Source of the DNA: Thalia democratica
Taxonomy: Eukaryota
Assembly: GCA_965202585.1 (NCBI GenBank)
Contig: OZ241829.1
Location: 6,634,001-6,698,000 of the forward strand
Length of the DNA stretch: 64,000 bases
Reading direction: 5' to 3'
The notes beneath the pieces are model-generated. The model did no database searches and was not told where the DNA came from. It worked only from the letters and a program-made list of their open reading frames with translations. The position numbers and the translations under genes were made by a program. Below, one piece after another: positions 1,064 to 62,222 of the stretch; positions within the stretch are counted from its first letter, which is position 1, and the number at the start of each line of letters is the position of its first letter.

Positions 1064-2927
1064 CTAAATTAAAAAGGTTGTAGAACGTAGATTCTCCAGT
1101 GTTCGTGTCTTCGATTGTGCAGTTGAAACCGTCGACGAAACCCTTGTCAACTGTAAACGTCACGAACGTTTCGTTCAACGTGACGTCATAATGCGGTTGG
1201 AGAGAAACTGAACTTGCTTCGAGCGGTCCTGTTAATAATAGATTTTTTTTACTGCTGAAATTATAAGAATATTTCATTTAGAAAACAATGGTGTACCAAA
1301 GTGCGTAATTAACAAATTTATACTTAATTGGAAAAGCACAGGCTTTTATGTATAAAGACTAACTGTTTTGAGTATGAACTTTTAAAGTTTTCATACTTTA
1401 TGATAAAAGTAAATAAATAACTTAAATATAATAAATAAATATTTGTATACATATAACTCAAATGGGTGTGAACAACATAAGGTTCTTCGCTGTACAATAG
1501 CTATGTACAGCAAAATATTTAAAAATGCATAAATTCCAAAAACTAACTGAGGTGGGTGTGAATTACTAGAGGTTCTTCACTGTATGTCTTTCCAATGGCG
1601 TATTTAACTTGGAACACCAGTTTGTTGCCGGGAAGATCCGGAAGTGATTCCTCGAAGAACCGGTAGTTTGCGTGTCCACGGATGAGCGAGGAATCGATCA
1701 GGTAAAATCCGTATTGTTTGTGCGCAGCGTGCAATGTGAACCTGCGAGAAAGATTGTCCGTTAGTAAATAGTTGTTATTTCTAAAAAAACACATTTCTAT
1801 TTTTCAGGTATTTTGTAATTTTTGTTTAAAGTTAAGCTAAAGTTGAGTTTAAAGAATAAAAAAGTTTCTAGTATGTGTATAAGTGTTAGCTGTAACTATT
1901 AACTTTTAAAAGTTTTGAACATATATCCATGTTTGTGAATCTATGTACGTACTTATTTTTATCCAGGTCTTACTGTTTTGTCTAGTAAACACGAAGTCAC
2001 ATTTTGAAAACTTACTCAGTTTTCACAACATCAAGAACTTATCAAGTTTTAGCTAAATTATAATAAAGTGTTAATTCAAACTTACAAAGTTTTGTCAATG
2101 TCCAGCACATTTGAAGGTTTTTTAAGGAACAGTTCGGCCCAGTCACGACCAGTGTCAACTCTTCCGGTTGGGTTTGGCGTTGGGTCTGGTTAATAAATAA
2201 AAATTAAATAAAAATTATAAATTTATAAAAACACATTTTATAAATAATCTTAATAAGTGGTTGTTAAAGATTTCACCATGATTTTTGTACAAAATTGTTT
2301 TTTTGATTTTTCTGAAACAGTTACAAAAAAAAAGGTTTAGAAAAATTTCACGTATGTAAAAGTTTTGTTGCAAAGTAAAACCGCAAATTATATGTTTACG
2401 TTGTAGCACATATCTCATTTACGCTCAATTAAGTATAATGTTGCAGGTAGATATTTATCAATTACTTCTGTCAACAGCAAATAAGTTCGAATACAAGTAT
2501 ATCTACATTCACCGTTTAAATACAAATTATGATACCTTAATACGTATTTAAAAAAAAAAGTTTGAACTGATGTCAGTTGTTATAATATAATGTACATACA
2601 GATCAAAATACATATAAAACTTTTAAACGAAGAAATATATTTTAGAAGTTACTAAAAACTTACCAATATCAACAGTTCCAATAATTTCTTCATATTCCCT
2701 CCTGCCCACTTTAGCACTCATTATGACATCATAACTAGCACCAGGCTTCAGACCATTGAATACATGGTTTACCTCGCTGTTTCCATTGAACTCTTTTTGT
2801 TCGATGACGTCTCCATTCTGTGGCACGATTGAGATTGTGACGTCATTATCAGTGGTTATGACGTAATCGACTCGCAATGACGTGCTGTCGACGACGGAGA
2901 CGCTGCCGCTTCCAAAATCGAACTTTT
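1064..2927 (-). CDS. X and Y type domains plus last visible exon (exons 2664-2927, 2086-2185, 1548-1741, 1064-1228)
   Basis: FDFGSG...GLKPGASYDVI; PTPNPTGRV; FQVKYAIG. The last exon ends in phase 1 (TTAG|GTGGGT) and no next exon was recognised in 1-1063. Confidence 0.75.
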
Positions 2928-44900: not shown

Positions 44901-47900
44901 TAACCGAATGAAATTTGTTTGTTTAAAAAGTAAACACCGAAATGATTAAAGTTAATAAAAGAACAATTAATTGCGGAACAGATATACAAACAAACTCACT
45001 AGTTCTCACAGATACGGGTCCGGCTACGTAGCTACGAACATCGGTATGAAGGGACACGTTGTACAACCTTCCGGGGATCAAGCCTACGAAGTGGAGATCT
45101 CTGTGATCGACAATCTTCAAAACGAACTGGTCCCTAGTGATCAAGTCGCTCACCTGGGATTGAAGCATCATGTTAATATTGTTGTTCATTGTTATTTTAT
45201 TATTTTTCAAGCAACGTGTGTATTATTTTGTGTTCAAATATCTTCAATACGAGTGGTAAGATTGCTTACCTTGAAGTTGGCATGTAACAACATGTTTTCA
45301 TCAACAACTTCTAAAGCTTTTTATAAAATGTGGTTTAAACCAAACCTTTCTTTGTATACCTTTAAAAAGTATACTTCTAATTAATTAAATTGATTTTTCT
45401 AACCTCAACATAGGGATTGTTTTCAATAATGAATTCCTTCGAAGGTGTCACAGTAAATGAAGATGTTGAAACGTTGCTTATACTGATTGTCATTGGTGGT
45501 ACAGCTGTTGAGGTATTATTGAACAAATATTTTAAATATAAATCAACATATTTGACAAATTTGATAATAATTGTAAATACGTGAAACATTATAGATACAA
45601 GTAGTTAAAGGAGTTATGTATGAAGCACAGCAATAAAAGGTAGTTTATTCCGAAAAAACACATTTAATAAAACAAAACAATGTTTTAATCTATTGTTTGA
45701 GTTGTTTAGCTCAAATCACGCATGTTTTTAACAAAAAAAAAATCTAGCGCACAGTATACACTTATCGACTTATTACAGTTAATAATTGTGACATTAATTG
45801 AAGTTAATCAGGTTCAAGTTGAAAATATTTTGTGTAAATACTGTTATGTCTTTTTACACAGCAAAACGTCACCTTTGTTTAATTTAGATTAACTTTAATT
45901 TGGGGGCTGTTGAGTTTACTTAACTTTGTTTCAAAACAACTTAACAAATTAGTTAAACCGCAAACGTAAGCGTAGTTTTTATTATCTGAGTGTAACTAAA
46001 TATAAACAAATTGCCAAATATTATTGTTTATTAATAAGCCAGCCGAGTTCGCTGTTTGTGCCGATTTCAAACAATTTAAAGAGCTTGTTTATATTTTATT
46101 TCGGAAACTATTTCAAACAGGCTTTGTTTATACTGCTTGCTTTAAAAGGTCAAACAGGTAACTTTTTAGATGTAAAAATATATTAAAGTAGTTTTTAACA
46201 AGTTTGCTCAACTATGCAAGGTTTATAATTTAATGACGGTTTTTGATTAACTGAAAAATACCAAAACTGGATATGAACAATAGTTTTTGAAATATACAAC
46301 AGTATGTTTTTCAATGAAACATTTTAAACTAGTTTAAAAGGCTGAAAAAAAAGTAATCTAAAATACTAATGAAAAATATAAATGAACATGTGAGTCAATG
46401 GCTGTAAAAGTTTATAAAGTTTTTAAAGCGTAATAAGCTTAATATATTTAAACTAAAACAAGTGGATTACAAGTTAAACCACTGAATTAAACTTATGAGA
46501 CTGATTAGTAGTAAGTTGATTTGAAGACTTCAACTAAAACAAAAACGACGATGTTTTTGATAAATTTTAAAGCACAATAAATTTTAAGCTAAAGTATTTA
46601 GTTGTAAATTTAACTATCAATCAACGAGGTTTAATAACTATGCTTTTAGACGAAATAAAGAACATTTTTAGTTTAAAAAAAAGAAAAAAAAAACTTAAAA
46701 TTTACAATAATAAAACTCAACATACGAGGCTTAAAAAGTTAGACTGCCAAATTAGGTTTATGAGACTAATAAATAATAAGTTGATTTGAAAATTTGAATA
46801 CATTTAAAACTAAATAACGAGATTTAACCAAAAAGCTTTCGATAGAACAAATAATTTAACTTGGACTATTAAAATAAAATGTTCTTTAAAATTAACAATA
46901 ATAAAATTCAACATACGGGGCTTGACAACGATGTTTTTGATGATCTTCTTGGCTTCCGTCCTGTTCACATCTCCGCTCACAGTGGTGACCTCCAGTTCGT
47001 ATCTGATCAGGGGCTTCACCGTTTCAAAGCTGACCCGACCCACGTTTGTAATTTTACTGTCCACTAGTTGACGGTACATGTCCCTGGTGTACAGGTCCAC
47101 CTGAAAGTTGTGAAAATATTTGTAAAAAGTTTTATATGTTTATTATATAAAATATATATATTTTTATCAGTATGTACAGAGTGACCGGTAATTTATACAT
47201 ATTGTAAACTTCAAGTTATCTTATAATTCTTGTCATATTAACTATATGTGTTTTTATCAATATGTAGAGGTCTACTGAAAGCGGTAATTTTACGTATAAC
47301 AGACTGGTCATTTTATAACAAAAATATTGTGTAAAAAGATTTTTTTTTTTCCCTAAATAACAACATAACTTTTATAATATATTAGTTTTCATCAGTTTTT
47401 ACACAGTTTATTTTGTTGAAACCTGGTCTTAATTATAGTTTAAATCATAATGTATGATGTTTTATTTTAATAAAATATTTAACACATTGAAGTAGATTAG
47501 ATAAAACGACCAATCTATGAATTAATTCCGTTAGCACAATCTTAAACTAAAGAAACGTGAAACGTATTTACTTTGGGCTTTCAAACACTTCATACTTATG
47601 AAAATTCTCAAAAACTTCACTTTCTATTATGCCCAAAATGTTTGAAGCTTAAACAACCTTGACAGCTTACATTGTTTTTGTAAAACAACATAAATGTTAT
47701 AAAGCACGCCTTTAGTAGTTAATTATTTTCAATTTGTTAGAGAAAGTATGTTTGTTTTGACTTGTCAAAGAGTCAAAATTAAGACAGATGTTTATAGTAT
47801 TTTTTAAGCTTTACTTATTTGCTTATCTTTGACATATTTTTACATACTCTAGTACACTACGATTTTTAAAGTATGATAAGTACACATCTGTTTTTTACTT

Positions 47901-50900
47901 AAAGACTGAACAACTAGTGTAACTAATAACAATAAATTTTAATCTACTTATACGGTAGACGGATTTAGAAATAAGTTTTGTGCAGTGCTACTTAATTAAT
48001 CAAAGCTTGAATATTTGTTTACACTAAAAATTTGCTTTATATATAACTTTACAGTTTTATACGCATTATTGATCTTATTTAACTTAAAAACCCTTGACAT
48101 TTTATAATTATATTTGGTAGAAAAGTTTAAAAAACAATTATTCTTAAATTATTCTATTAGTATTAGTTTATCAAGACCACAATTTAACAGCATACGACTA
48201 AATAATAATTTTTTGTTTAGCTTTCATAAAAACAGTCAAAGCTTGAGCAAAATTTGAGAATTTACAAATGGAGTAGTCAGATATGTTTAATCTATATAAA
48301 AGCTCAATGATTACGTCATAGTTACCTACCTCATAATAATCCCAGTCGCCGCTGACTGTATCAAATCTGAATTGAAATATTCCGTCTTCGTAAAATATTT
48401 CTATATTTTCCTCCACTGGCAATGGGTCTAAATAAAAAAATAAAAAAAATTTTTTGATATCAAAAGTAAAAAAAAAATTATAGAACTGTTGGTGCTTAAA
48501 ATTTAATACAATTTCGAACGTTTAGATAATCGTTTTCTCTTGAGAATTAAGAAGGTATTTAGGCTATTACTTTATTTAAAATTAGTGCCACTTATTTCAA
48601 GTAACAAGCATTGAACTTTTAATTCTTATAACAGAAAAGTCTTTAAGTCAAAATTCCTTAGTCATACTTTTAGTTATACTTGGTTGTCGTGTTTTTATTA
48701 AGATCATTCAGTACACAATTTAATTAACAAAAATAGAAAAAAACTACGAGGTTGCGTACGTATTGATATGCAGCAAAACACTTTTAAAGCCTTCTGTTAA
48801 TAACAATCCGACAATGTAGCTTGCTAAAACTAGTTGTTGGAAAGTTTTAACGAGGTTATAAAAAACTAACAGGTCCTGACGCTTCTGGGGCCAGCTAACA
48901 AATTGTCGTCCTGTGAGTACAGAGAAACGTTGTACAACCTTCCTGGAGTGAGGGCAGTGAAAAATATGGGGTAATCCAAAACGATGTTCCTCTTATTCAC
49001 CTCGTTCGTTGTCAGGTCCATTACCTGTTGGTTTGTACTTAAGTTGGATATGCATATTGATAAAAAACATTAATAAAAAAACTCTTACTTATAAATATGA
49101 ACAAATTTTAAGCTTTTAAATAAACTGCTTATAGTGTTTTGCTAGACTTAATTTGAACAAACTGGTTGTATTAAAAAAATGCAAAAAATCTCAGTAGTAA
49201 AGAAAAAGTGTGCTCAAAAATTTTCGGCGAGGTTCTAATAAACATTGTAGTTTTGAACTTAGTTTTAATCAAAACGAACCTCCACATACGGATTGAGGTT
49301 GCTCTTGAATCCTCGAGGTGGAATGACGTTGAAGGATGTAGACGTCACGTTTGTCACGTGAATTTTAACTGGAAATTATTTTTAATGTTCAGTACTTTAA
49401 AAGTCATAAAATTTTACTTTAAAATTTTAATAACTAAATAAAATTAACTTTAAAATTACTTGATCCAAACATTGCTAATTTAAAAATTGAAACTCCAACT
49501 TAAATTATTTTTGTGAAGTGTTTTTAAAATCCGTACGTTTACATATCAAATATTGAAAATTCACAATGTTCGAAGACAATACGAGAAATAAGATATTGGT
49601 TGAAGTAATTTTTTTTTTCATTCCTTTTAGTTATAAAAAATTCTAACTGTTAAACCTTCTACTCAAACTACTTTTGTTACTTGCTTTCAATACTACATGA
49701 CCTCTCGCATCTTTACGCACTAGTGACGTTACGCATCGTTTAGTTACGCATTTGTGCGTAAATTAGTGAGAGGTTACTGTATATACATTTTTTCATATAA
49801 TTACCTCATATTTATTTATATTTAAACATGTTTTATACTCACAAGGTTCCGGTTGTTCGAAGACGATCTTCACCGAAGTCGAAGTCTCGCTCCTCAGTTC
49901 GCCTCGTTGGGAGAAAATGTCCAACAAGTAGACTCCCTCCTCGGGGATCGGGAACCTCAATCCCGTTTCAGGAGTCGATTTCTCCCAGATCAGGTATCCG
50001 TCCTCGCCGGTTCTTACGAACACCAGCACGTATCTGTTTAAAAAATAGTTGAAACAGTTTCTTTGTGTTGTTTAAAATTAAGTAGACTACAGCTGTATAT
50101 TTATTAAACTTGTTTTTTTACGAGCACCAGTGCGTAGCTTTTTTAGAAAAAATCACTAGAGTTAGTTACAACAATCGTTTGTTAGGTAAAAACCTGTTTT
50201 ACAGTATCGTATTTGTGTGATTTAGTATGTGTACTTTAAATTCCTTGTTGTGATAAACAACTAAATTGGGCGGTTATTAAGAATCTCAGCGATTAGCTTA
50301 AATCAGAATTTCAATTGCAAATAAGCTTTCAATATACTAATTATGATGTCACAAACCCGTAATCAAACCTTAAATCAGAATTTCGTAACAAAACCAATTA
50401 TTGTTTCTTGTGCGGTAAATTAATCACGTTTTAAAATAACACTTGTTATTTAGTTTTTACCGACAAATAAGCTTTAAATATACTAATCATGACGTCACAA
50501 ACCCGTCTACGTCATCAACTGGGTCCCACGTGACCTGAATTTCGTCATCGACGACTGACGTCAGCACGTTTGTTGGTGGTGGGGGCGGTACTGAAAAAAT
50601 TAAGATAATTAATTATCAATATTTTTGAAGAAAACAATTTAATCTCTTGATTATTAATACTACTGAAAAAATTTTTGAATTAGCTAATAAAACTTTTCAT
50701 TCACGACTTATGTGACAAAAAAAGTTAGTAATTTGTCAGTAACATTAGTAGTTAATGTCAGAACGTAAGTGGCACAAACAATTTTTTCTATTTCTAATGC
50801 AGCTTTTATAAAAAAAAAATGTCAAAATCCGTTTTGAAAACATAAGGCTAACTCGTAAAAGTCAATTTTTTTGTATTTAACGACTTGTAAAGTTTAAATA

Positions 50901-53900
50901 AAAACAAACCGGGGTTGTCGGGCTTGTAGGGAATTTTGAACACCGTGGGGTTCATGCTGGCCAGGTTGCCCATGGTGGACCACATCTCGGCGTAGATGAT
51001 CCCCTCGAAATCGCCCAGGCTGACGTCGACGAACGTTTCCGGGGTTTTCCGGTCGAACAGGATCTTGTTAGTTCCGTTTATCGTCAACCGAACTTGGTAT
51101 CTGGAGAACGATTACAATATAATTTTTTTTAATAAACACATGGTGAAACAAAGTTATTTGTTTCAACACTTTCCTTGCCGTTAATAGCAAAAATATCTAG
51201 TTCAGCTTAAATTAATAATACTTTGACGTTTAAGCGTACCCGTTGGCTCTTTCTACGGGCTCCCAAGTTATTTGGATTCCGTCTTCTATCTTCCAAATCG
51301 TGAAGTCTTCAGGTGCTTTTGGAGCTGTTGTTTTGTAAACAGTTTTAATTTCACTTAAAGTTTATTTAAAAAAGTTATAAAGTCACAATTAGTAAAGTTA
51401 CAAAAGTGAATTTATATAAAGTTGTAATTAGTAATAAAATTATAGCTTACAGTTTACTTTTTATAAATATACACCTTGCGGCTCAGGTTTTCACACCTGA
51501 GTCCAACATTGCGCAAAAACAATACAGCAATGTTAACCGAATAAAAATTAAAAAAAAACAACAACATACGTAACGTAAAGTCGACGGTTGCTCTGGACAC
51601 TATGACGTCACCGCTCTTGTAAGCAATGGCCGCCTGATGCTGGTATCCGGACTTCAGTTTTCCGACCGTGATGTCGTAGACGCTGTTCGATTTCACGTCT
51701 ACTATCTCCTTGTATCCGACTTGTCTGAAAACATTAGGTCAAGTGAGTTTGGTGTTGATTTTTGAAGTTCTTGTTTTGCATTTGACTAAATCTTGGTAAG
51801 CATGTGTCGAATAAACTTCGTTGTAAACAATATACTCTATGTTGAAACAGTCATGCTGTGGTTTACGTTGTGAGTTTGTTAGTTATCTTTATATGATAGC
51901 TGATAAGTTTACCCCTTAGTCCAGTGCTTAGGTTTTTGCTTTAGATAGTTACAAACTGCTTATTAATACAAACTTTCTGCTTTCAGTGCCATCAAGAAAG
52001 TGTATGTAAATTTCTGTATAAACATAAAAATTATCATTCTAATTTTGTAAAACAAACTTTCTATAAAAAAAAGTAGATAAATTTCAATGCAATTTTTAAA
52101 TTTTTAAATGCTTATTAATACAACAACAAACTTTCTGCTTGTAGAGCCGTCAAGGAGGTGTATGAAAATTTCAGTGCTGGTGACAAAAGTGTCTTCGGCG
52201 CCGATGACAAACTTCAGCACCGCCGTCTCCTCGTCAACAATCTCAACTTCCAACGGGCTCTTGTACGCTGTTGTTTTCATTTGACAATTTACTAATGTTT
52301 ATATTTAGATTGTATTTTTGTAAATAATTGTGTTAACATTTTTCATTGACGATTATAAAATTGATTTTGTAAAAGTTATACAGTTGTACAAGTTCCGCTT
52401 CATGCTTACTTTATTCCAATACTATATATAAACAATATTGCACTTTTGAACGGGATCTTGTACGCTGTTGTTGACGATTTATTCACTTAAAGTGCATGTT
52501 ACATTACCTTTTTGTAAGTAGCTTTTTAACATTTTTAAATGGAAAATGGAAACTTTATGTTGTAAAAACGATATAGTTCTAAAAGTTTCGCTTCTTGCTT
52601 ATTTGACTTTGAGTCTATAAATATGAAACAGTGTTGCACTCTGCAACAACATGAGTTTTAAGTTTGATAGCATAAGTTAACAATTTCTACAAGTTTAATA
52701 CTGACCGTGACCAGTATAGTAGTAACAACAAGTTTGTCGCTAAACGTCGAAACTTAAAACAAAAATAATTTTTACGCAACAGCATAGTTTTGATAACGTG
52801 ATACTGTACATTTTGTTAATAGCATATATATATATATATAAAGTGACGTACATAGTAACTTAATAATAGTTCAAACAACTGACCGGTAGTAACGAACAGC
52901 TTGTCGCTGAACATCGAGATGTCCTCTCCCGATTTTGCTCTGACCTCCACCTGATATCTGGTTTCGGGAAACACGTCGGTTACCTCAACCTTGTCCGTAT
53001 ACCTGACTTCGAACGCCTGAAAAAATGTTAAAAAGTAAAAACTCGCTTAAACTGCTTTAAACAAAAATTTACTCAAGTAAAATATTTAAAATATTTATTA
53101 TATTTGAAAATACCTGCACGAGATCAAGCTCGTCCATGACTCTGACGACGTAAGAAGTTGCCCCTCTTACCCGATCCCACGAGAACTATTGAAAATTTTA
53201 ACAGATTAATTTTTTTTCATATACATTTATATATATATTTAAAGATACAAATTATGAAGCTGTTTGGTTTTAATTGTTGTACTCATACTGAAAAGTAGAC
53301 AAAGTTTGAAAACTAACTGTAAACGAAGTTGTTTTTATTTCGTTTATTCTCAAGTTTAGAGGCTTGTCCAATACATCTGTTTTATTGATATAAGATAATT
53401 ACTTTTTCAAGTACTTTGAATTTTTTTTAAGCTATAGCTAAATTTGTCTAGTTGTTTTAAACAAAGAAGGTATAAAGCATTTATGTATGTATTTCAAAAG
53501 TTTAGAATTATTCATTTATAATAAAACGAATAGTTTAAAATGCTTTTCTACTTGTTTATAATGAGCATGAATCTTTTAGCTACATTTTACTTCTTCCTAT
53601 ATATACTCACCAAACACAAGGAACTTGTTGTGTGGTTCACTCTTTTGTTTGTAGCTTACAGTGACCACCTGAAGCAGGTATTGTTGACCTGGTATCAGTA
53701 TCTCCCCTGCTATGTTCCACACAAGATCGGAAGTTGCGTTTATCTGTTAAAAGTTTATGTCTACATAAGCATAGAACTTAGCATACTTTTTAACGTTCAG
53801 TTACAAACACAAATAATTCATAAATTTTTTAAGTAATGTAAGTATGAAAACAAAAGTTAACAAAAGTGTTATCGATTAAAACCTTAAATGTGTCTTCAAC

Positions 53901-56900
53901 TTCAACGCAGTTTGTATTTTTCACGTTAAAATCATTTTATAGTTGTATTAATAAAAGTCAACTCAGAAATAACATCAATAGTTTTTTTTTTCAAACTGTT
54001 AACAACCACTCACTACAGTAGTAACTTCTTCGCCGATGGTTTTTTTAAACTATTAACAATCACTTCTTTTTTTTTAATTTTTTTTTAGAAAACTGTTTTT
54101 TATTTTTTATTAACAATGACTCACCACAGTGGTAACTTCTTCGCCGACTAATATCTGACCAGCGGGTGTCGTCGGAACGAACAACAACTCGTAATAATCT
54201 TTTCTGCCCTCTGCTGGCAGAAACTGTATTTCTAAGACGTTCGAAACCGCCTCCACCGAGCCGCGAACCTGCGTCACTCTTGCAGGTCCTGTAAGTTGTG
54301 ACGTCACAATGCTGTTAAGTTCTTACAAAGAAATACTCAATTAATGTAATCAAGTTAAAAGTCTTTACGGTGTTACGTTGAATAACTTATTAGCCTTGAG
54401 ATTAAAAAATTTAACTTCAAAAATTAATAAATAGTTTTACTGTTAGCAAAGATGCTTCAGGATGTTTTTTATTCAAATAAAAGTTTTACTTTCTATATAT
54501 AAACGGCTAATTTTAATAAATTTGAGTAACCAAAACAGTTTTATTTATAGTTGCAAGTAGATTATAGTTGTTGTACTAACTTGTATAGAAGGTAGACACG
54601 GATCCAAATTCACTCGCTATGTACGCGCTCGAGTTGAAAGAAGCCACTGAGAACTTGTACTCGTTGCCAGGAAACAAGTTGTATGCAGTGAACTGGGAGT
54701 CGTAAGCGAAGAAGGTCCTTGTTTCAATGGCAACAGAGTCCTTGAACATCCCGAAAATTCTCACGATGTAGCCCTGTAAAACAGTTTAAGAATATTTAAA
54801 TGCGAGCTACTAGTTAAGTTAGCCTTTTTATCAATTATAGGTAGCTTGTTAGCTTTTTGGCACATTCTTTATTATATAGCGCTGTGAGAGGTAACATTGT
54901 TTAGTGTAAGTGACAGTGTAAGTTATATTTTTTTTTATAAGGTTTAAGTGCTTAATGAACTCTACAGCATAAGGTTCCAAATTTAAAAACATATTTATTA
55001 ATTTTAAATCGAGTTGCTTACAATCAAGATTGTTGATAGACTTTAAAGGCTTCATCGTTTTAGCGTATAATTTTTTTTTAATTTACTCTTTTCAACCTAC
55101 AATCACACGAAACAATTTTATTTGCAAACTAACGGCAGCTTGTTCGCCATACCAAAGGTTGTGATAAAGTTTTAAAGTTTTTTAGAATAAAAAAAAAATA
55201 AAATAAAAACACTCTACTAAAACTAGTTGATTGTTTTTCAAAATTAACTCTAAATTTTTTCAAACTAACGGCGGCTTGCTCGACTCGCTGCCACTTGGCA
55301 GTTATCGAATATTCGTCAGAGTTCACGAGCTCCAGCTCCCTGGGAACGTCAGGAATGTTGACGATGATGCTTTCAACGCGGTACTCGTCAGATACGAGCC
55401 TGTCTGCTTGAGTGAACACCACTAACAGGTATCTGTGGTTCAAAAGTAACACAACTGTAAATTTTGTGCATTAAAAGTTATACACATTAGTTTTATATGT
55501 ATTTGTAAGTTAGTGGTCCGCTCGAGTGAAAACCACTAGCAAGTATCTGTGACATGAGTGAGTTAAGTTGTTAAGTAAATTAAAAAATAGAATGTTTCTA
55601 TTTGTGTTATGTGTATTTGTAATTTTGTAGTAGTCTGTTATGAAAACAAAATTAAATTTTGCTTACCCAAAATTATAATAAATAAACGTGAATTAATTTT
55701 ACAGTTTTCAAGATGGCAGTTTTACAGTTATTAACGATAATTAAAACAAACACTAATTACTCGAAATAAAAACTTAAAACGGAATTAACTTTTTGCTTTC
55801 AAACGTTCCCGGCAGGAACCCGGTTATGACGTCATCTTCGTTATCGCTGACGTCAATCCTCAGTGACGTCACGTTTTTGTTCAATACCTCATCGTACATT
55901 ATGACGTCATAGTGGGTCGACCTTCCTCTCGCCCTGGGAAACCGAATGTTCATCCCCCCTTCGACAAAGTTGTACTCCAAAGACTCGATCATTGAAGGCG
56001 CTGTGATTGTCAAGTATTTATTTTCTCTTTAGTTTACTGTATTATTTTTATTAACTGTTAAACAATAGGTTTTCTCAAAGCTGTAAGCAACTGCAAAGTA
56101 AAAAGTAAGTTTTGATCATTGCCGGTTTCGTGTGGGTAGGTTGTCAAATAGATATTTATACTTATCTAAAGTTTTTTTAGGTGAATGCTCCCTTGTCATA
56201 GTTAATCATTATTTATTGTTGCCGTTTGTAAAATTGTATTTTTTCTTTTAAAAGAGTTTTAATTTTCAAAACATAGTTGACATTTATTCTTAAGTTATTT
56301 TTAAATAAAATTTTCAGTCATTAATGGTTCTTTGAAATACTTTTGAAAAATAAAATAGTGAATAGGTTTAAAAGGTTTATACTAAATGAGTGTAGTTAAA
56401 AGACTTGATAGAAAATTTATTTTCTAGAAAAAAGTCTATAAAAAGTAAGTAAAACGTAGTTTAGTTAATTTAAGCAAACTGACTCAACAAAAATGTCTCT
56501 TAAATAAGCTTAGTATTAGTTTGATTAAACTTTTATTATTGTTTAAGAATTTGTCAATGTTTAATAGGTACTTCAAATTTTGCAACAATAAGAAGCGAAT
56601 TAGGTAGACAAACTTTTAAGTTTTTAATTTAATACAACACTTTTTGAATTTACATAATACAAAGTGTTTCATTAAATTGCTTCGGTCTTTTTAATTTTAT
56701 CAAACTATTAAAACACATTCAAGTAACTAACTATTTTGAGGTGTTTATATGGACAAAACTAATATATCAAATTGCATTCTTTCAATAAAAAAGCTTTATC
56801 ATAAATCTAATATTAATGTATAAATTCAGTAGATAAATTATTTTTTAATATAATGATTTTTGTATCTGCGAGCATTTAAACTGGTTTGGACGTTTACTTT

Positions 56901-59900
56901 TATTTATCTTATAAAACCATGATTTATGAGGTTTTCACCACATTTCAAAAAACATATATGGGCGACGGTATAAATTTTAATGGTTTTTACTTCCTGTCTA
57001 CTTTGAAAAAAAGGAAGTTTTTTTTTAAGTATTAATAAGCGTAATTTGTTCAAAAATTATATTCAAAATAATATTTTACATAATACACGTTAAAGTAGTT
57101 TTAAAGAAGAACCAAAGTAATTTCTTAAAAGTGTTACAAACAATCAATTGCTTTTAAAAGTGTAGATTTAAATAAAGAGCTGGAGTACTTTATGAATGAA
57201 ACAAAAGTATACGTTAAACGTACACTTTAATTTTGTTTATATTTGTGACTTGTATGTTGTCAACTACTTAGCAACTTACCAATTATAAATAAAATAAATT
57301 ACCATTCATAAAAAGGTGAACGGTGATTATTCAGCACATGTGCAGCAAAACCAAAAAAGAGTTACTACTATTAACAAGTCAAAATAATGCTAACAAACTA
57401 ATCAAACTTAAAAAAACAACACCAGTACTTTTATTAGAAAATTCAAAAGGGACAAGGTTTAAAAATATATTTCAACCCGTGTCCATTTATTTCAAACATA
57501 AAGTTGTACAAACAAACTAGTCTGAAAACTCACGAATACATAACAACTAACTGGTCTGAAAAGGGTAGGCTTCAGACACGTTGCCAAGCAACTCTCTGAT
57601 GGACTGTATCTTCACGGCGTAGTGGGTTCCGGGGGTCAGTCCTATTTCCTGATGCTGCGCCAACTGGACCACCAGGACCGACGTCTCCGACGGACGCGAT
57701 AACTCGTACAACTGGAATATAATGAAAATAAATAATAATAAAATACAACTTAAATATCTATAAAACTTTTAACAACTAATCGTATAATTGGAAAGTAGTA
57801 AAAGTGTGTAGTAGTAAGTTGACAAATGTTTCAGACGGCCAAGAAAACTCGTAAAACTGGAAAATATTATTAAAAAAAATTATGAATAAGATTTTCGAAG
57901 AAAAACATTTGAGTAACATTTTTTGTTAACAACCGTATGTTGTATACTGAACAAAATTTGAAAGCGTTTACGACTTTACGGTAGTTTAACTTTAAAATCG
58001 GTAACTGATGTTTTTTAAGGCTTTAAAGTCTAATCGATTTGTTAAATTACTATTGTATCTTTACTATTGTATTGTAATATACTAGCGTATTATTTTTTAT
58101 AGATATCAGCACATTAAAAGCAATTTGGACAATTTTCGGATTTGGCTTAAACAATTGCTTTCTAGCCGTGGCATAAGCAACATTTGACATTTTATTTTTC
58201 TGATACAATTACTCTTTGGCACACGACAGTAGACCGGCTAAGAAATAAATTCCTCACTTAAACCGCAAAGTAAAGGCATTATGACGCTACAAAGTGGAAT
58301 TTAAGCCGCGAATTAATCCTTCTACGTATATGTAACATTTCATCATCCTATATGTATGTATGAATGTGGACCCTAAGGGCTTTTGAATAAGATTATCGTT
58401 CATTTTTGAAACAAAGAACCAATTTACTGGAATAAAGTATTAAATACTAGTTATTGTTTTAGTAAAATCGATTAGAGTGCTTACTTTAAAGTATCATTTT
58501 TTTTTTGAGAGTTCTATTTGAAGTAATTTTACATCGTTCATGCTGTGATTTAAAACTTATATAACTATTGATGAAAATAAATAAATATATTGGCTACTGT
58601 TGCATATTGCGTTTAAATACTACACTATGAGTTACTATAAGTTAACAAAGTTACTTTACACTGAAACATATGTTAATACGTTCTAAATACCTTAGTTTTA
58701 CTTGGCATTTCAATTTGAAATAAGCTAAATTATTCTAAACTGATTGATGCTTACTTTTGTTAAAACTAAGGTTTTATTAGTTATTTCCATCTAAATTTTT
58801 ATCGGTTGTTGCAAAAATGTATAAAATGTTTAAAGTACACAAAAGGCATAAAATATTCCGAACAGAATTATATTTGAAAGTTTACGATAGTTTACTTTAT
58901 TAATCATATAAATGATTGTTCGCAAAACTTTTAAAACATTAAAATGATATTTTGGATTTACCTACATATATAGTAAACTTATGAATGAGACAGTTATTTA
59001 CGTAGCAAATAAATTTTACCTTGGTACATAAAAAACTTCGTGTCCTTAAAAGTAAAATTTTACGTTGTAACATAATTACGACATGTAACATAATTTGGGT
59101 AGACTGAACACAAATTACCTTATTAAGTGAAACATAAAACTTTTAAGAATGTACTCAATAAATAGAATGTCGCAAATTAGACAAATTGTTTGTGGATGTT
59201 TGAACTTTGCCGTTGTTAAAATTTTTAATTAAAGTATTATTTACATACTTTAAAAATATTTAATTAAACTTTATACACATGTTTCAGGTGTAAAATAATT
59301 TTTAATTTGATGACCAAATCGTACATGTTTGTACAAATTACTTTACAAATTTAATAATAGTAGCTGTTTTAAATAACACTTTGATTTATTTGTTGTATTG
59401 CTTTTACGGTACTAGCCAGTACGACTTGTAAATGCGATCAAATTTTTAATTTATTTAAATTTATAAATTACTTCAAAAAGTTAAATTGCATAAGTTTTAT
59501 TTAAAATCAATCTATTTAAGTGCTGTTTTATAATTTCTTTTTACTTTAATAGAATTTTACAAGTATGCGCTGTATACAAGCATGGGAAAATTTTAAGTAC
59601 TTTTGTACATTAAAATTCTTTTATGATCTCCTTTAGATATCGAATTATTCAAATAAACATTTCGTAATTCGCTTAAACACGCAATTATCACACAGGCGTC
59701 ACGTAAAATATGTCTTATCGCGTTTTTATTAAATTTTAAGCGATTTTAAACTTTCATAGAGCGGTGATTAATTCTGCTATATTAGATTTATTAAAATCAA
59801 AGGTTCAATGCAGTATGTGGTAAGATTAGCTTTAAATTAAAAAATCTCTTTTAATGTTAATGTATAAAAAAAAGTTTAGTTTTAGAAAACTAAAAAATAA

Positions 59901-62222
59901 CTTTACTTTTTGCAGATAACGTGAAGAGACTTATAAATTTATTTTACACAATAAAGACAAAGTATGTATTTTGTAATTAACAACATTTGTTTTTATATTA
60001 ACAACATGCATTTAAAAACTTTAACATGTGTTAATACACCATTTACTGCAAATTAAACTACGTTTTTCACTTTTTTGTGCACTGCTTTCAAAGTTAAAGT
60101 AGTTTACTTATCAAAACATACTAAAAGATAGTCTTTAACTGTTGACTTAAGTAAAATACTTATACAATAAAGATAAAGTATATATTCGAATATTGAAAAA
60201 CACTTTCGTTTATTTATAAAAATAATCTTTTACCTGTAATCTGTAACTGTTGACATCGGAAAAATATTTATACGATGGAGAAGAAAAATATATTTGTGTA
60301 CTTGATAACATTTTCGTTAATTTATATAATCAACTTCTCACCTGCAGTCTGTAACTGTTGACATCTGAAACCCTTCGCCATCTGATCATTACAGAATCGT
60401 TAGTAGCTCTTGTTTTTACTTCTACTGGTGGATGAATATCTGAATTGAAAATAACTGACTAAAATAACGTGCTTTTTAGCTAAATATGGTACGTAATTTG
60501 AAGGAAAGCATATATTTATAGTTTAAGTACTTGTAGTTAAAAATGCTTGTAAGTCATTCTAGATTTTTGCTTGAGTTTGTATAAAGCGACAAGCAATTTT
60601 TTCCGATTTTTTTTAAGGAAAGTTTTGCTACATGTTTACTAAAAACTAAAGTTTGTAAACATGTCGTGATTTGCGTTTGAAAACCAAAAAATTTTACAAA
60701 AGACCGCAAGAGCTTTTTTGAATGTTTCGTCTACAAAACTACAAAAAAAAGTCACAACTAAAAATTAAAAAAAAACCCAAAGCTCTGTTTGCAGCAGAAT
60801 GGAGCTCACACAAGATGCCCATCACTTTATTTTCCGAAAATTTAAAAAAAAAAATATAAACAATATGATTCAACCACTTGCCTCTGCACACGAAAGCCCT
60901 CTCTGCGGCGGTGTGGAGCTCATACGAGATTTCAAATATTTTGTTTTCCAATTCCTCCGCATCCTGGATCGTCATTAGGACCGAGTTGCGTAGCCTCCTT
61001 ACGTGATCCATCTCTTGGATCGCTTCGTTCTGGATTTCGATATCAATATGTTTACCAAAGAGCAATTTGAATGCTTTGTTCTTCGTAGGTTATGCGTTTT
61101 TTTTATTGCTTTATACGTTTTTATTAACATGTGGCTATGTATAAAAGTAGAACAGAGCATCTCACGCTGCCTTTAAAATTAATCTTTTTACGCTAAAATA
61201 TTATGTTTTAAAAGTTGAGCTTTTTAAAAGTGTAGATAGTATAACAGTACAATATTCAAAACTTTCGAATTTTTTTTTATAACAAAGTCACGACACTCAC
61301 CCCAACAGCTATGGCGTGAATGGTCGACGGCCTCGTCCTCAACTCCTGCTCGTAAGCTCTTATGACGTCATTCGAGTCCGATGACGTAAGTACTATGACG
61401 TGCACGCCCGCGCTCGCCCGAGTGCCCGTGACCGGTTTCAGCACCTCATACGTCACTTTGTAGTACGCTGTGTTGAAACAAGTTCAGTTAACTTAATTGA
61501 AAAATGTAGTTTTTATTTGTTCAAAGAATGCAAAGTCTTAGCAGAACTTTGAAGAGATTACGTGTAGGTATTTCATAGGAAAAATTGGTAGAAAATACTT
61601 TTGAAGTAAAAAACTAAAACAATTTTTTAAACCCAAAGTTTATTAGTGCAGTTGTGTTTAAAGTACGTGTAAAACCTTTACTTTTAACATGTACTAAAAT
61701 TTTAGCTATTGTCTTTTGAAATTTTAAACAACTACATCTCAATATTTATATCACCTCTTCCAAGTCTTGATCTCCTTGTTCTCTGCGGAGAGAAGTCAAC
61801 ATTGTTGAGTAACTCGTAAAACTTTTGCTTGTCGTTGTAGTCGTTGAACTTTATTTCCAAATCCGCCTGATTGCTGTACGTCACCACCGACACCTGTTCA
61901 TAGTATTTTATTTTTGTTAATTTGAATGGCGAAGTTTGTGAGTTTAAAATGTAAAAAAAGTATATACCAGTAAAATAATGATTTTTTATTGTAAAGTTGT
62001 AAAGAACTGACAAGCGCAAAGTAAACTAAAAGTTTTGTCGAACAACTGAAAAAAATGCATCATTTTGAACCTGAGTGTCATCCGGCCCGTAGGACGCCAT
62101 GTTCATGTAGTTCCTGATGATCTTCCTGAAACTTTCTCCTGTCCTCTCGTCCACGCTCCGGCTCGTGTCGACCACGAAAACGACGTCCGCGAAACTGAAC
62201 TTCTCGTCAGGGCACAACCGGG
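1064..62222 (-). CDS. Giant multi-exon extracellular protein, partial (>=105 exons, ~6,870 aa in window): vWFA - 16xFN3-like - vWFA - mucin/PTS - ~37xFN3-like; continues past the left edge
   Basis: GC-richer coding islands are flanked by minus-strand AG acceptors and GT donors. Intron phases match at all 104 junctions traced by hand, and the summed exon length is 20,622 nt. Motifs include FN3 L-x-P-G-x-x-Y, vWFA DVVFVVDTSRS and TTQEPTTEAV repeats. No stop, TM helix or enzyme domain was reached, and no orthologue is recognised with confidence. Confidence 0.85.
3156..6787 (-). CDS. FN3-like domains 47-51 (exons 6685-6787, 6131-6312, 5596-5779, 5142-5427, 4774-4909, 4301-4491, 3925-4030, 3507-3679, 3156-3282)
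   Basis: Contains YLVPGEVYSV, DLEFGAVYDV, DVTFNWQRQPGKVDYYVI. Phases are consistent. Confidence 0.8.
7216..9105 (-). CDS. X-Y-Z unit 7 (exons 8830-9105, 8545-8650, 8104-8300, 7769-7908, 7216-7363)
   Basis: FDFGEV...DLVPDKEYVF; FVPTPVAEV; YYWFNLTYGVEYQV. Confidence 0.82.
9447..11542 (-). CDS. X-Y-Z unit 6 (exons 11273-11542, 10930-11029, 10417-10613, 10050-10143, 9447-9643)
   Basis: NLKPGSGYDVII; YPPTPVGEV; KENDGRVEGPWYFVEQV. The Z domain is split by an extra intron. Confidence 0.83.
11758..13178 (-). CDS. X-Y-Z unit 5 (exons 12918-13178, 12676-12775, 12275-12474, 11758-12036)
   Basis: Exon sizes 261/100/200/279; near-identical to unit 4. Confidence 0.87.
13389..14867 (-). CDS. X-Y-Z unit 4 (exons 14607-14867, 14361-14460, 13961-14160, 13389-13667)
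   Basis: Exon sizes 261/100/200/279; NLKPGSFYDVII; YYWTSLRKGESY. Confidence 0.87.
15022..17531 (-). CDS. X-Y-Z unit 3 (exons 17262-17531, 15943-16042, 15497-15696, 15022-15300)
   Basis: Same motifs and exon sizes (270/100/200/279). The X-Y intron is enlarged by a mobile-element remnant. Confidence 0.85.
16081..17050 (+). mobile_element. 5'-truncated, decayed Penelope-like retroelement remnant (GIY-YIG endonuclease C-terminus plus 3' tail), antisense in an intron
   Basis: 16233-16680 reads YPCGKCMLC...NCKNFGIYAAECMECNEYYVGQT...QRWCSHRYN*...AALKLHY...LDF*, a Cys knuckle followed by GIY-YVG with in-frame stops. The host intron is 1,219 nt, against about 140-250 nt in units 2, 4, 5 and 6. Boundaries are approximate. 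Confidence 0.75.
17724..19560 (-). CDS. X-Y-Z unit 2 (exons 19297-19560, 18985-19084, 18424-18629, 17724-18002)
   Basis: GLVPGKDYDV; YPPTPVGEVTTSNV; DGLVLDKFF; YYWQDLRKGESF. Confidence 0.85.
19796..21982 (-). CDS. Three-domain X-Y-Z FN3-like unit 1 (exons 21704-21982, 21468-21570, 20980-21170, 20469-20590, 20046-20122, 19796-19869)
   Basis: X: FNFGTG...GLRPGTKYEV. Y: FPPTPKGRV...FEVAYVING. Z: FYWYNFKKGSRYEISV. Confidence 0.82.
22141..25157 (-). CDS. FN3-like domains 22-25 (exons 24959-25157, 24380-24641, 23982-24120, 23357-23547, 23003-23108, 22476-22645, 22141-22273)
   Basis: Contains SLTPGEIYQV, SLYRGGRYKV, KISVSWVADEGDVDYYVI. Phases are consistent. Confidence 0.78.
25420..28922 (-). CDS. 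FN3-like domains 17-21 (exons 28756-28922, 28488-28602, 28275-28363, 27838-28033, 27383-27534, 27042-27189, 26394-26517, 26191-26278, 26006-26087, 25420-25716)
   Basis: Contains GMKPLKSYEI, FALEWENI, GLESGTTYKV, NLKPATSYTI, NLLPDTSYVI. Phases are consistent; two acceptors are AAG. Confidence 0.78.
26753..27033. repeat. 98-bp intronic tandem repeat, 3 copies
   Basis: aattagaaagtttt.atgaaacaaa.ttttaggca.acataca at 26793, 26891 and 26989, ending just short of the donor at 27037-27041. Confidence 0.9.
29138..33406 (-). CDS. Single 4,269-nt mucin-like Thr/Glu-rich exon (PTS domain)
   Basis: One open frame (matches the ORF track 29112-33167). Acceptor AAACAG| at 33406, donor |GTATTT at 29138. Phase 1-1, length divisible by 3. 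Confidence 0.9.
30590..32680 (-). repeat. Coding 30-bp tandem repeat (TTQEPTTE[A/S]V), roughly 65 units by span
   Basis: Plus strand shows recurring ggttc(t/c)tgagtagt(a/c/t)acag(c/a)ctc(g/a)gt(t/a)gtt, interrupted once by a non-repeat spacer at about 31550-31640. Confidence 0.95.
33584..35000 (-). CDS. vWFA domain 2, degenerate MIDAS (exons 34884-35000, 34353-34540, 34016-34136, 33584-33756)
   Basis: LEC...FLDISFVYHFNKRM...QISFSVYN...GGNRLGQAL...HLIIFIATSPSSDD...LKAMGATITGFGVG...C. Confidence 0.8.
35511..35532 (-). CDS. 22-nt micro-exon linker (D)LLEVLT(P)
   Basis: CTTACAG|ATCTTCTTGAAGTGTTGACGCC|GTAAGT has strong sites and is required to convert phase 1 (35831) to phase 2 (35000). Confidence 0.7.
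35831..49368 (-). CDS. FN3-like domains 9-16, a two-domain (A-B) unit repeated 4 times (exons 49280-49368, 48871-49024, 48330-48427, 46917-47100, 45404-45504, 45000-45153, 44628-44722, 43916-44084, 43267-43370, 42776-42932, 41760-41854, 40227-40398, 39092-39186, 38290-38443, 37170-37264, 36625-36725, 35831-35904)
   Basis: A-type domains read NV(T/S)TxSFxVxPP...L(T/I/V)PGRLYNVSL...AGPxSxRT. B-type domains read PxPV...FxFxxxxGDWDYYxV...V(S/N)G. Exon sizes recur (154/154/157/154 and 98/95/95/95 nt). Confidence 0.85.
35881..36624. repeat. 80-bp tandem array filling an entire intron; each unit contains the acceptor plus the first ~25 nt of exon 35831-35904
   Basis: Units start at 35881, 35961, 36041, 36121, 36201, 36281, 36361 and 36441, with a degenerate continuation to the donor at 36624. 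Confidence 0.95.
42419..42795. repeat. ~122-bp tandem repeat, 3 intronic copies plus the exon end, each with a GT donor
   Basis: ggtgagcacgg occurs at 42433, 42555, 42677 and 42783. Confidence 0.9.
43620..43955. repeat. ~125-131-bp duplication of an exon end plus donor (one near-perfect copy, one degenerate copy)
   Basis: caaacgtttggtgaaaattcccctgaa.ctcgagtagctggacct at 43786 and 43911, with a degenerate copy at 43623. Confidence 0.9.
49700..49774. repeat. Short imperfect inverted repeat with internal ttacgca copies
   Basis: acctctc-n5-tttacgcac ... gtgcgtaaa-n5-gagaggt. Confidence 0.5.
49843..60439 (-). CDS. FN3-like domains 1-8 (exons 60342-60439, 57552-57711, 55805-56000, 55270-55432, 54581-54773, 54125-54288, 53611-53743, 53318-53376, 53114-53185, 52884-53016, 52132-52267, 51570-51724, 51240-51324, 50910-51100, 50503-50590, 49843-50033)
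   Basis: Contains DSVMIRW, GLTPGTHY, NLFPGNEYKFSV, ITAKW, FSWDRVRGATSY, VFPETRYQVEV, IQVTWDPV. All junction phases are compatible. Confidence 0.8.
60876..60884 (-). other. Non-canonical GC-AG 5' splice site
   Basis: AGAG|GCAAGT matches the GC-donor consensus and gives the phase 1 required by exon 60342-60439. No in-phase GT donor is adjacent. Confidence 0.7.
60882..62222 (-). CDS. vWFA domain 1 (exons 62071-62222, 61755-61893, 61301-61467, 60882-61029)
   Basis: LCPDEKFSFADVVFVVDTSRS...QVSVVTYSN...LGRAYYKV...VHVIVLTSSDS...IHAIAVG is the classic vWFA strand/helix order, and the phases are consistent. Confidence 0.85.

What the first reader, a model, noticed from the sequence alone, without database searches (positions are those of the whole stretch)
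1064..62222. Giant (>6,800 aa) vWFA / FN3 / mucin mosaic extracellular protein with no recognisable orthologue
A single phase-consistent chain of 105 exons joins two vWFA domains, about 53 FN3-like domains and a ~1,420-aa mucin segment. The A-type repeats (LxPGRLYNVSL) recall R3-type receptor phosphatase ectodomains (PTPRB/PTPRJ). The vWFA+FN3 pairing recalls FACIT collagen XII/XIV N-termini. I know no family with this exact order. It could be a lineage-specific matrix, tunic or adhesive scaffold or a giant receptor ectodomain; function is inference.
Basis: partly seen in the sequence, partly recalled or inferred. Interest (0 to 1): 0.7.

Follow-up and report, generated by a model that had tools for sequence, protein, structure and literature searches.

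The report
Giant tunicate VWA–FN3–mucin surface protein gene
The window holds the middle 6,900 codons of a real, expressed, single-copy tunicate gene for an enormous extracellular protein made of familiar modules. The gene probably continues on both sides to about 12,200 residues ending in a membrane anchor, and no described protein matches its domain order.

Summary
My own splice-aware exon chainer found 110 phase-consistent minus-strand exons (62222..1064) with no stops, giving 6,912 aa. They encode two VWA domains, 53 full and one partial FN3-like domain, and a 1,423-aa Thr-rich mucin exon.

RNA-like contigs of one public run lie only on exons.

Two domain types that Pfam misses fold confidently as FN3. 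A divergent haplotig shows purifying selection on exons and keeps every splice site checked.

The gene is larger than reported:
- Upstream there is a signal peptide, Sushi, EGF and FN3 modules, and a third VWA.
- Downstream there are about 25 more FN3, a proline hinge, Ser-Gly clusters, a second mucin, a transmembrane helix and a tail of about 7 residues.
- The total is about 12,245 aa (1.38 MDa).

Continuity across the window's low edge is inferred, not shown. A conserved candidate signal-peptide exon lies in that 3.6-kb intron.

There is no PTP domain and no collagen helix. The closest relatives are uncharacterised Ciona and Clavelina proteins with only part of the architecture. This scan has already found other giant FN3/mucin genes elsewhere in this genome. 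Function is inferred.

The parts
60777..62222 (-). VWA domain 1 (model exons 1-5). The MIDAS-type D-x-S-x-S motif is intact. The 3' boundary of exon 4 is unresolved, with alternative donors at 60878 and 60777.
   Evidence: Pfam VWA on three exons: 24.7, 25.1 and 16.6 bits. Gene model. Alternative donors. Alignment.
35831..60439 (-). FN3 array I: 16 FN3-like domains (exons 6-42). The stretch 49368-35831 holds four two-domain A/B super-repeats, where the A type carries L-x-PGRLYNVSL.
   Evidence: Gene model and unit table. HMM domain hits. RNA contigs cover exons 38-42.
35511..35532 (-). 22-nt micro-exon 43, which restores the reading phase between the last FN3 exon and VWA2.
   Evidence: Splice scores are 7.8 and 6.0. 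An X4 contig holding exon 44 carries a 14-nt loose end that is the reverse complement of this exon's 3' end. The depth in that bin equals 22 nt at the contig's depth.
33584..35000 (-). VWA domain 2 (exons 44-47). It is divergent and the MIDAS motif is lost.
   Evidence: Pfam VWA on exon 45, E 5e-4. Full-length alignment to VWA1 and to the upstream VWA, E 2.5e-10 and 1.6e-9. Introns 34137-34352 and 33407-33583 are spliced out in X4 contigs.
29138..33406 (-). Single 4,269-nt mucin (PTS) exon of 1,423 aa: 39% Thr, 15% Glu. The 10-residue unit P-T-T-E-A-V-T-T-Q-E comes from a 30-nt array of about 71 copies at 30562-32691.
   Evidence: Translation and composition. Tandem Repeats Finder. An X4 contig joins it to exon 47.
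1064..28922 (-). FN3 array II: 37 FN3-like domains plus a 54-aa partial unit (exons 49-110). It includes seven consecutive three-domain X-Y-Z super-repeats at 21982-7216 and an eighth at 2927-1064. The youngest copies are 87-90% identical at the DNA level, introns included.
   Evidence: The X and Z types fold as FN3. The X type occurs in the genome only here and on the haplotig. Exons 9105-1064 are under purifying selection against the haplotig.
35879..36614 (.). An 80-nt tandem array (7.6 clean copies, about 9 in all). It makes up the 720-nt intron between exons 41 and 42 and starts 26 nt inside exon 42.
   Evidence: Tandem Repeats Finder. The intron length of 720 nt comes from the model.
42416..42757 (.). 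A 122-nt tandem repeat of 2.8 copies. It re-copies sequence resembling the 3' end of exon 32 (same S/P-V-L-T-R/K-T peptide) together with a donor site. This creates two 21-nt in-phase pseudo- or alternative exons (42690-42670 and 42568-42548).
   Evidence: Exon contexts.

Best explanation
The window carries the central 6,900 codons of one real, transcribed, single-copy gene of a tunicate.

Its most likely full product is a type-I membrane-anchored glycoprotein rod of about 12,245 residues (1.38 MDa before sugars), in this order:
- signal peptide;
- cysteine-rich modules (Sushi, two Ca-binding EGF, two FN3);
- two tandem VWA domains, the second with an intact metal-site motif;
- 16 FN3;
- a third, metal-site-less VWA;
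- a 1,423-aa O-glycosylation-type mucin segment;
- about 63 more FN3;
- a proline hinge;
- about 1,300 residues of unclassified sequence with three acidic Ser-Gly clusters, which are consensus glycosaminoglycan attachment sites;
- a second short mucin;
- one transmembrane helix and a tail of about 7 residues.

Shown: the exon chain, splicing at 33.4-39.1 kb, the VWA, FN3 and mucin identities, and selection on the exons.

Inferred: it works as a very long, stiff, sugar-coated tether or spacer on an epithelial surface. From textbook dimensions the reach is roughly 0.5-0.8 micrometre (about 3.5 nm per FN3, about 0.25 nm per mucin residue). The distal VWA and EGF modules would bind matrix, and the FN3 arrays would act as an extensible rod. 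An apical-matrix or tunic anchor, or a glycocalyx barrier, are the most likely roles.

The gene grew by tandem duplication of blocks of two to three domains together with their introns.
For: - Gene model: 110 exons and 6,912 aa with no stop. On 134 kb the chain runs from a Met plus signal-peptide exon at 83765 to a transmembrane exon at -39396.
- RNA: X4 contigs sit on exons only. They join 33406|33584, 34136|34353, exon 44 to micro-exon 43, 36725|37170 and 38443|39092.
- Domains: Pfam VWA, Sushi, EGF_CA and fn3. The X and Z domains fold as FN3.
- Haplotig C584: 68 gap-free exons are 95.4% identical, against 79-91% for introns. All AG/GT sites are kept, there are 309 synonymous versus 155 non-synonymous codon changes, and there are no stops. 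This holds on both sides of the window edge.
- Exon 110 has an average-strength donor (score 5.7). Decoy donors that strong occur about once per 2 kb, so a chance one in the right phase in a 170-nt terminal exon has about a 3% probability.
- Only one convincing signal-peptide-like first exon lies in the 93 kb of introns, so the window part has no start of its own.
- Reading through the transmembrane exon's donor gives a stop after K-A-T-K.
- Ser-Gly clusters are present and Gly-X-Y runs are absent.
Against: - Splicing was seen only for 33.4-39.1 kb. The junctions 64286|62222 and 1064|-2561 rest on phase, donor strength and the absence of alternative starts.
- The 3.6-kb intron at the low edge holds a signal-peptide-like exon (-1573..-1633) with a donor score of 8.3 in a compatible phase. 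It is kept in the haplotig with an in-frame 9-nt deletion. That fits an internal promoter or a separate downstream gene.
- Reading through exon 110's donor gives a stop after two codons, with AATAAA 61 nt further on.
- The two 54-aa units flanking that intron could not be shown to be halves of one FN3.
- The model between 82.8 and 75.5 kb contains weak micro-exons.
- Pfam finds nothing in the juxtamembrane exons.
- Glycosylation, location and function are untested.
Confidence: 0.62

Rival explanations
1. There are two tandem genes rather than one. A secreted protein (signal peptide, EGF/Sushi, VWA, FN3, mucin, FN3) ends just after exon 110 at about 1058. A separate membrane proteoglycan (FN3 x25, Pro hinge, Ser-Gly, mucin, TM) starts at the signal-peptide exon at -1573.
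For: - The signal-peptide-like exon has the strongest phase-compatible donor found in any intron. It is the only convincing such candidate in 93 kb and is kept in the haplotig.
- It lies in the largest intron of the locus, 3,624 nt.
- A stop follows two codons past exon 110 and AATAAA sits at 997.
- The Clavelina relative is a secreted VWA-FN3 array that ends in an FN3 with no transmembrane helix.
Against: - Exon 110 carries a normal donor, which is unlikely by chance (about 3%).
- The protein would then end in a 54-aa partial domain.
- The phase is compatible with the exon at -2561.
- An internal promoter would explain the signal-peptide exon without any gene break.
Confidence: 0.3
2. It is the ectodomain of an R3-type receptor tyrosine phosphatase (PTPRB/PTPRJ-like).
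For: - The top profile hits include proteins named PTPRB-like.
- The Z-type model matches the fourth FN3 of PTPRJ and FN4-6 of PTPRD.
Against: - No PF00102 match lies within 31 Mb on this contig.
- A stop follows about 7 codons after the transmembrane helix.
- R3 ectodomains lack the VWA, mucin, EGF and Sushi modules seen here.
Confidence: 0.02
3. It is a FACIT-collagen-like protein (collagen XII/XIV type), with the VWA/FN3 array as its non-collagenous arm.
For: VWA and FN3 modules are interleaved.
Against: - No run of six or more Gly-X-Y triplets exists in any frame of the 134 kb.
- The chain ends in a transmembrane helix.
- A mucin segment is present.
Confidence: 0.02
4. It is a dead or mis-assembled repeat array that is not a working gene.
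For: There are many near-identical tandem units and several duplicated exon ends with donors.
Against: - Spliced RNA contigs are present.
- There are no stops in 6,912 codons.
- Synonymous changes outnumber non-synonymous changes 2:1, and all splice sites are kept in a haplotype about 10% divergent.
- DNA contigs from three runs cover the region.
Confidence: 0.02

Closest known systems
Ciona intestinalis uncharacterized protein LOC104265931 (XP_078487772.1, 3,704 aa)
   Same: A Thr-rich mucin repeat is followed by about 33 FN3 domains. Its second and third domains after the mucin match the second and third post-mucin domains here, in the same order (34% and 41% identity, E down to 6e-14). Overall there is a 31% match over 829 aa.
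   Different: The model starts inside the mucin and ends in an FN3. It shows no VWA, no transmembrane helix and no X-Y-Z triplets, and the rest of the array is not collinear. It has no described function.
Clavelina lepadiformis LOC143466065 isoforms (XP_076820779.1, 5,603-6,305 aa; named 'titin-like' or uncharacterized)
   Same: It is a tunicate protein with a signal peptide, one VWA and about 60 FN3. Its VWA is 29% identical to the VWA just upstream of the window.
   Different: It has one VWA only, with no mucin, EGF/Sushi modules or transmembrane helix. Most of its FN3 domains hit one generic domain here, so the similarity is at family level and not orthology.
R3 receptor tyrosine phosphatases (PTPRB, PTPRJ/DEP-1)
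   Same: Both have long arrays of the same FN3 subtype (L-x-P-G-x-x-Y-x-V-x-L). Both are type-I membrane topology, if the downstream part belongs to this gene.
   Different: There is no phosphatase domain and the tail is about 7 residues. The VWA, mucin, EGF and Sushi modules are extra.
FACIT collagens XII/XIV (NC3 arm)
   Same: VWA domains are interleaved with runs of FN3.
   Different: There is no collagen helix. A mucin segment and a membrane anchor are present instead. The TSPN domain was not looked for.
Membrane-tethered mucins (MUC16 type) and the insect giant apical-matrix anchor Dumpy (comparison from my own knowledge)
   Same: All are megadalton-scale, with a long glycosylated rod, a single transmembrane helix and a very short tail. 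The likely job is tethering or shielding an epithelial surface.
   Different: The rod here is mostly FN3 rather than SEA or EGF/DPY modules. No SEA or ZP domain was detected. The resemblance is functional analogy only.

Membership tests
R3-type receptor protein tyrosine phosphatase | Intracellular PTP catalytic domain (PF00102) | tested here: not met
   A six-frame genome search finds the nearest hit on contig C5 at 37.95 Mb, while the locus is at 6.6 Mb. A stop follows about 7 codons after the transmembrane helix.
R3-type receptor protein tyrosine phosphatase | Ectodomain made only of FN3 repeats | tested here: not met
   VWA, mucin, Sushi and EGF_CA modules are present.
FACIT collagen XII/XIV | Collagen triple-helix Gly-X-Y segments | tested here: not met
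   No run of six or more Gly-X-Y triplets exists in any of the six frames of the 134 kb.
FACIT collagen XII/XIV | Alternating VWA and FN3 modules | tested here: met
   The order is VWA-VWA-FN3x16-VWA-(mucin)-FN3 array.
FACIT collagen XII/XIV | TSPN/LamG-like domain before the collagen helix | not tested
   No Pfam hit to such a domain appeared on the exons scanned, but spliced domains could not be submitted.
Membrane-tethered mucin | Long Pro/Thr/Ser tandem-repeat domain | tested here: met
   The segment is 1,423 aa, 39% Thr, with about 71 copies of a 30-nt unit.
Membrane-tethered mucin | Juxtamembrane SEA domain (or NIDO-AMOP-VWD) | tested here: inconclusive
   Pfam gave no hit on ten single downstream exons. 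Spliced sequence could not be submitted.
Membrane-tethered mucin | Single transmembrane helix and cytoplasmic tail on the same polypeptide | tested here: inconclusive
   The transmembrane exon at -39396..-39513 is in the phase-consistent chain. The junction 1064|-2561 has no RNA evidence.
VWA domain (PF00092) | Profile match and full-length Rossmann-type domain | tested here: met
   VWA1 exons score 24.7 and 25.1 bits, over the 23.8-bit cut-off. VWA2 scores 20.8 bits on one exon and aligns over its full length to VWA1 at E 2.5e-10.
VWA domain (PF00092) | MIDAS metal-site motif D-x-S-x-S | tested here: met
   The motif is present in VWA1 (D-T-S-R-S). It is E-S-S-R-S in the upstream VWA and absent in VWA2.
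FN3 domain (PF00041) | Sequence profile match | tested here: inconclusive
   Only 7 of 62 exons match at E<0.01, with a best E of 7.8e-5. Most domains are split over two exons.
FN3 domain (PF00041) | Seven-strand beta-sandwich fold | tested here: met
   The X type has pLDDT 93 and matches fibronectin EDB and LAR FN5. The Z type has pLDDT 86 and matches sDscam, PTPRJ and PTPRD FN3 at TM up to 0.77. The Y and A/B types were not folded.

The most novel reading that the evidence does not exclude
This would be a lineage-specific, roughly 1.4-MDa membrane-anchored tether, a functional counterpart of insect Dumpy or of MUC16. It would fasten or space the salp's epidermis (or a feeding epithelium) to its cellulose tunic or mucous net. 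An internal promoter would give a shorter anchor-only isoform. Recent domain-block duplications would tune the rod's length.
Probability: 0.15. Interest if true: 0.6.

Novelty: new variant of a known kind. Interest (0 to 1): 0.4.

Why it matters
If the full chain is one protein, it is among the largest membrane proteins predicted in any chordate. It would be a concrete candidate for the molecule that couples tunicate epithelia to their extracellular coat, which is poorly known in pelagic tunicates.

The locus also shows how giant modular genes grow. Two- and three-domain blocks were duplicated with their introns. Exon ends were re-copied together with donor sites. One intron is built entirely from an 80-nt tandem array.

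Against this, every module is ordinary, the function is inferred, and this scan has already found several other giant FN3/mucin genes in the same genome.

Tried and rejected
- **Coincidental length match.** It is an Ig/FN3 array with no VWA, so it is not a counterpart.
- **X-domain profile search.** Against 1.84 billion proteins it mostly returned generic FN3 arrays: tenascin-X-like, PTPRB-like, titin-like and bacterial proteins.
- **Ciona and Clavelina proteins as queries.** These searches found no further relatives. The index is word-based, so a blank is weak evidence.
- **Exon at -2561 as a query.** It found only a DNA-derived 62-aa ORF and no transcript fragment.
- **Split-domain test.** I tested whether the 54-aa units either side of the 3.6-kb intron are halves of one FN3. 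A Z-type HMM gave no significant alignment, and BLAST suggests both resemble N-terminal halves. I dropped the split-domain argument.
- **Sequencing runs.** No run is labelled RNA. X4 was recognised as RNA-like only from its exon-only, intron-skipping contigs. X3 ('organism B') covers introns, so it is DNA.
- **Literature.** Two searches found no paper on such a protein. A third call failed on term length.

Full report
**What is in the window**

The window is AT-rich (25-35% GC) apart from a G/T-skewed block at 29-34 kb. Long open stretches lie overwhelmingly on the minus strand.

I wrote an exon chainer. It uses codon log-odds trained on the long open frames, splice-site matrices learned iteratively, and dynamic programming that enforces phase and forbids stops. 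It returned 110 exons from 62222 to 1064 and 6,912 aa with no stop. The splice consensus is CAG|R and AG|GTNAGT.

Six or seven micro-exons (8-47 nt) are low-scoring and unverified. Some sit inside local tandem duplications of an exon end plus donor.

**Domains**

- Pfam finds VWA on three exons at 62.2-61.3 kb and on one exon at 34.5 kb.
- The spliced second VWA aligns over its full length with the first (E 2.5e-10, small database). It has lost the D-x-S-x-S metal-site motif that the first retains.
- Exon 48 (33406-29138) encodes 1,423 residues: 39% Thr and 15% Glu. It is built on a 10-residue unit from about 71 copies of a 30-nt repeat.
- Between phase-1 introns the remaining sequence falls into 80-105-residue units.
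- An HMM built from those units finds 16 before VWA2 and 37 plus one partial after the mucin. This count is circular.
- Pfam fn3 matches only 7 of 62 exons. I therefore folded the two Pfam-silent single-exon types. Type X has pLDDT 93 and type Z has pLDDT 86. Both are seven-strand sandwiches whose best solved matches are FN3 domains: fibronectin EDB, LAR, sDscam, PTPRJ and PTPRD, at TM 0.6-0.77.
- The array is organised as four A/B two-domain super-repeats (49.4-35.8 kb) and eight X-Y-Z three-domain super-repeats (22-1 kb). The youngest are 87-90% identical in DNA, introns included.
- The X type occurs nowhere else in the 801-Mb assembly except on a haplotig.

**Is it one transcript?**

No listed run is labelled RNA. 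One small run (X4, same study as the assembly's reads) holds 23% of the sampled words.

Laid on 33000-38900, its contigs lie only on exons and skip introns exactly at my splice sites:
- 33406|33584;
- 34136|34353;
- 36725|37170;
- a loose end at about 38443-38445 that is the end of exon 38;
- a contig holding the whole of exon 44, whose 14-nt loose end is the 3' end of the 22-nt micro-exon at 35532-35511.

Per-bin depths equal 74 nt (exon 42) and 22 nt (micro-exon) at that contig's depth. It is therefore not met.

**Beyond the window**

The window is G000:C5:6634001-6698000. I fetched 50 kb below and 20 kb above it and re-ran the chainer.

Upstream:
- an exon at 83765 with a Met and a clear signal peptide;
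- then Sushi, two EGF_CA, FN3, and a third VWA at 65791-64286 (Pfam);
- the last VWA exon is phase-compatible with 62222.

Downstream:
- about 25 more FN3-like units;
- a proline-rich exon;
- about 1,300 residues without a Pfam match on single exons, containing three acidic Ser-Gly clusters;
- a second Thr/Pro-rich stretch;
- a transmembrane exon whose read-through stops after four more codons.

The total is about 12,245 aa, or 1.38 MDa.

**Comparative support**

Contig C584 (43 kb) is a collinear haplotig, 85-94% identical, covering window 9219 to -30073.
- Across 68 gap-free exons, identity is 95.4%. An intron sample is 79% identical.
- Every AG/GT site is kept and no stop appears.
- Synonymous codon changes outnumber non-synonymous ones 309 to 155.

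**The weak point: the junction at the window's low edge**

The 3,624-nt intron is the largest in the locus.

Evidence for a break or an internal promoter:
- The intron contains a signal-peptide-like ORF (-1573..-1633) with a donor score of 8.3, in the phase needed by the next exon.
- It is the only convincing such candidate in 93 kb of introns.
- It survives in the haplotig with an in-frame 9-nt deletion.
- Reading through exon 110's donor gives a stop after two codons, and AATAAA follows.

Evidence for continuity:
- Exon 110's donor is of ordinary strength (5.7, 40th percentile). Decoys that strong occur once per about 2 kb. A chance one in the right phase in a 170-nt terminal exon has about a 3% probability.
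- No other start exists for the window part.

My attempt to show that the flanking 54-aa units are halves of one FN3 failed.

I put one long transcript, probably with an internal promoter, at about 0.6, and two separate genes at about 0.3.

**Comparison with known proteins**

- No PTP domain lies near the locus.
- There is no Gly-X-Y run in 134 kb.
- The X-type profile retrieves generic FN3 arrays, some named PTPRB-like or tenascin-X-like.
- The only specific relatives are uncharacterised tunicate proteins.
  - Ciona LOC104265931 has a mucin followed by about 33 FN3, and its first domains after the mucin are collinear with those here.
  - Clavelina LOC143466065 is secreted, with one VWA and about 60 FN3.
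- Neither has the full domain order. Literature searches found nothing.

The taxon (pelagic tunicate or salp) comes from earlier notes of this scan. I confirmed only that the specific relatives are ascidian proteins.

**Verdict**

This is a new variant of a known kind: a giant modular cell-surface mucin/proteoglycan. Its function is inferred.

Noticed in passing
window 35879-36614: The 720-nt intron between exons 41 and 42 consists of about 9 copies of an 80-nt unit. The array begins 26 nt inside exon 42, so each copy carries the acceptor and the first codons of the exon. The same observation was made in note s1-301145.
   Followed up: partly
window 42416-42757; 52706-52752; 60777-60830; locus L006 around window -39520 to -39690: Short stretches resembling an exon's last codons plus its donor site recur downstream of the real one four times. 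The peptides are SVLTKT/SVLTRT, STFSDKLVVTT, a copy of the ELH-AA-RA motif, and VTSYVKATN after the C-terminal VMSYIKATK. They create in-phase pseudo- or alternative exons. Only the first case was confirmed as a DNA tandem repeat.
   Followed up: partly
L003, window coordinates -1573..-1633 and -1444..-1557: Two signal-peptide-like ORFs lie in the 3.6-kb intron. The first has a strong phase-compatible donor and is kept in the haplotig with an in-frame 9-nt deletion. The second has no usable donor. The first is a possible internal promoter exon.
   Followed up: partly
G000:C584 (43,003 nt) against window 9219..-30073: This is a separately assembled second haplotype with 6-15% divergence. It has a 1.9-kb insertion at window about -400 and an unaligned stretch at -1009..-1424. 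Heterozygosity at this locus is very high.
   Followed up: partly
window 34576-34772: DNA runs X1-X3 pile up at about 100,000x word depth with many loose ends. This marks a high-copy dispersed repeat inside the intron between exons 44 and 45.
   Followed up: no
L009/L008, window coordinates 83765-66608: The N-terminal 880 residues include a 135-aa first exon and two exons with a cadherin-repeat-like N-x-P-P-x-F start. None has a Pfam match. The exon model between 82.8 and 75.5 kb is poor.
   Followed up: no
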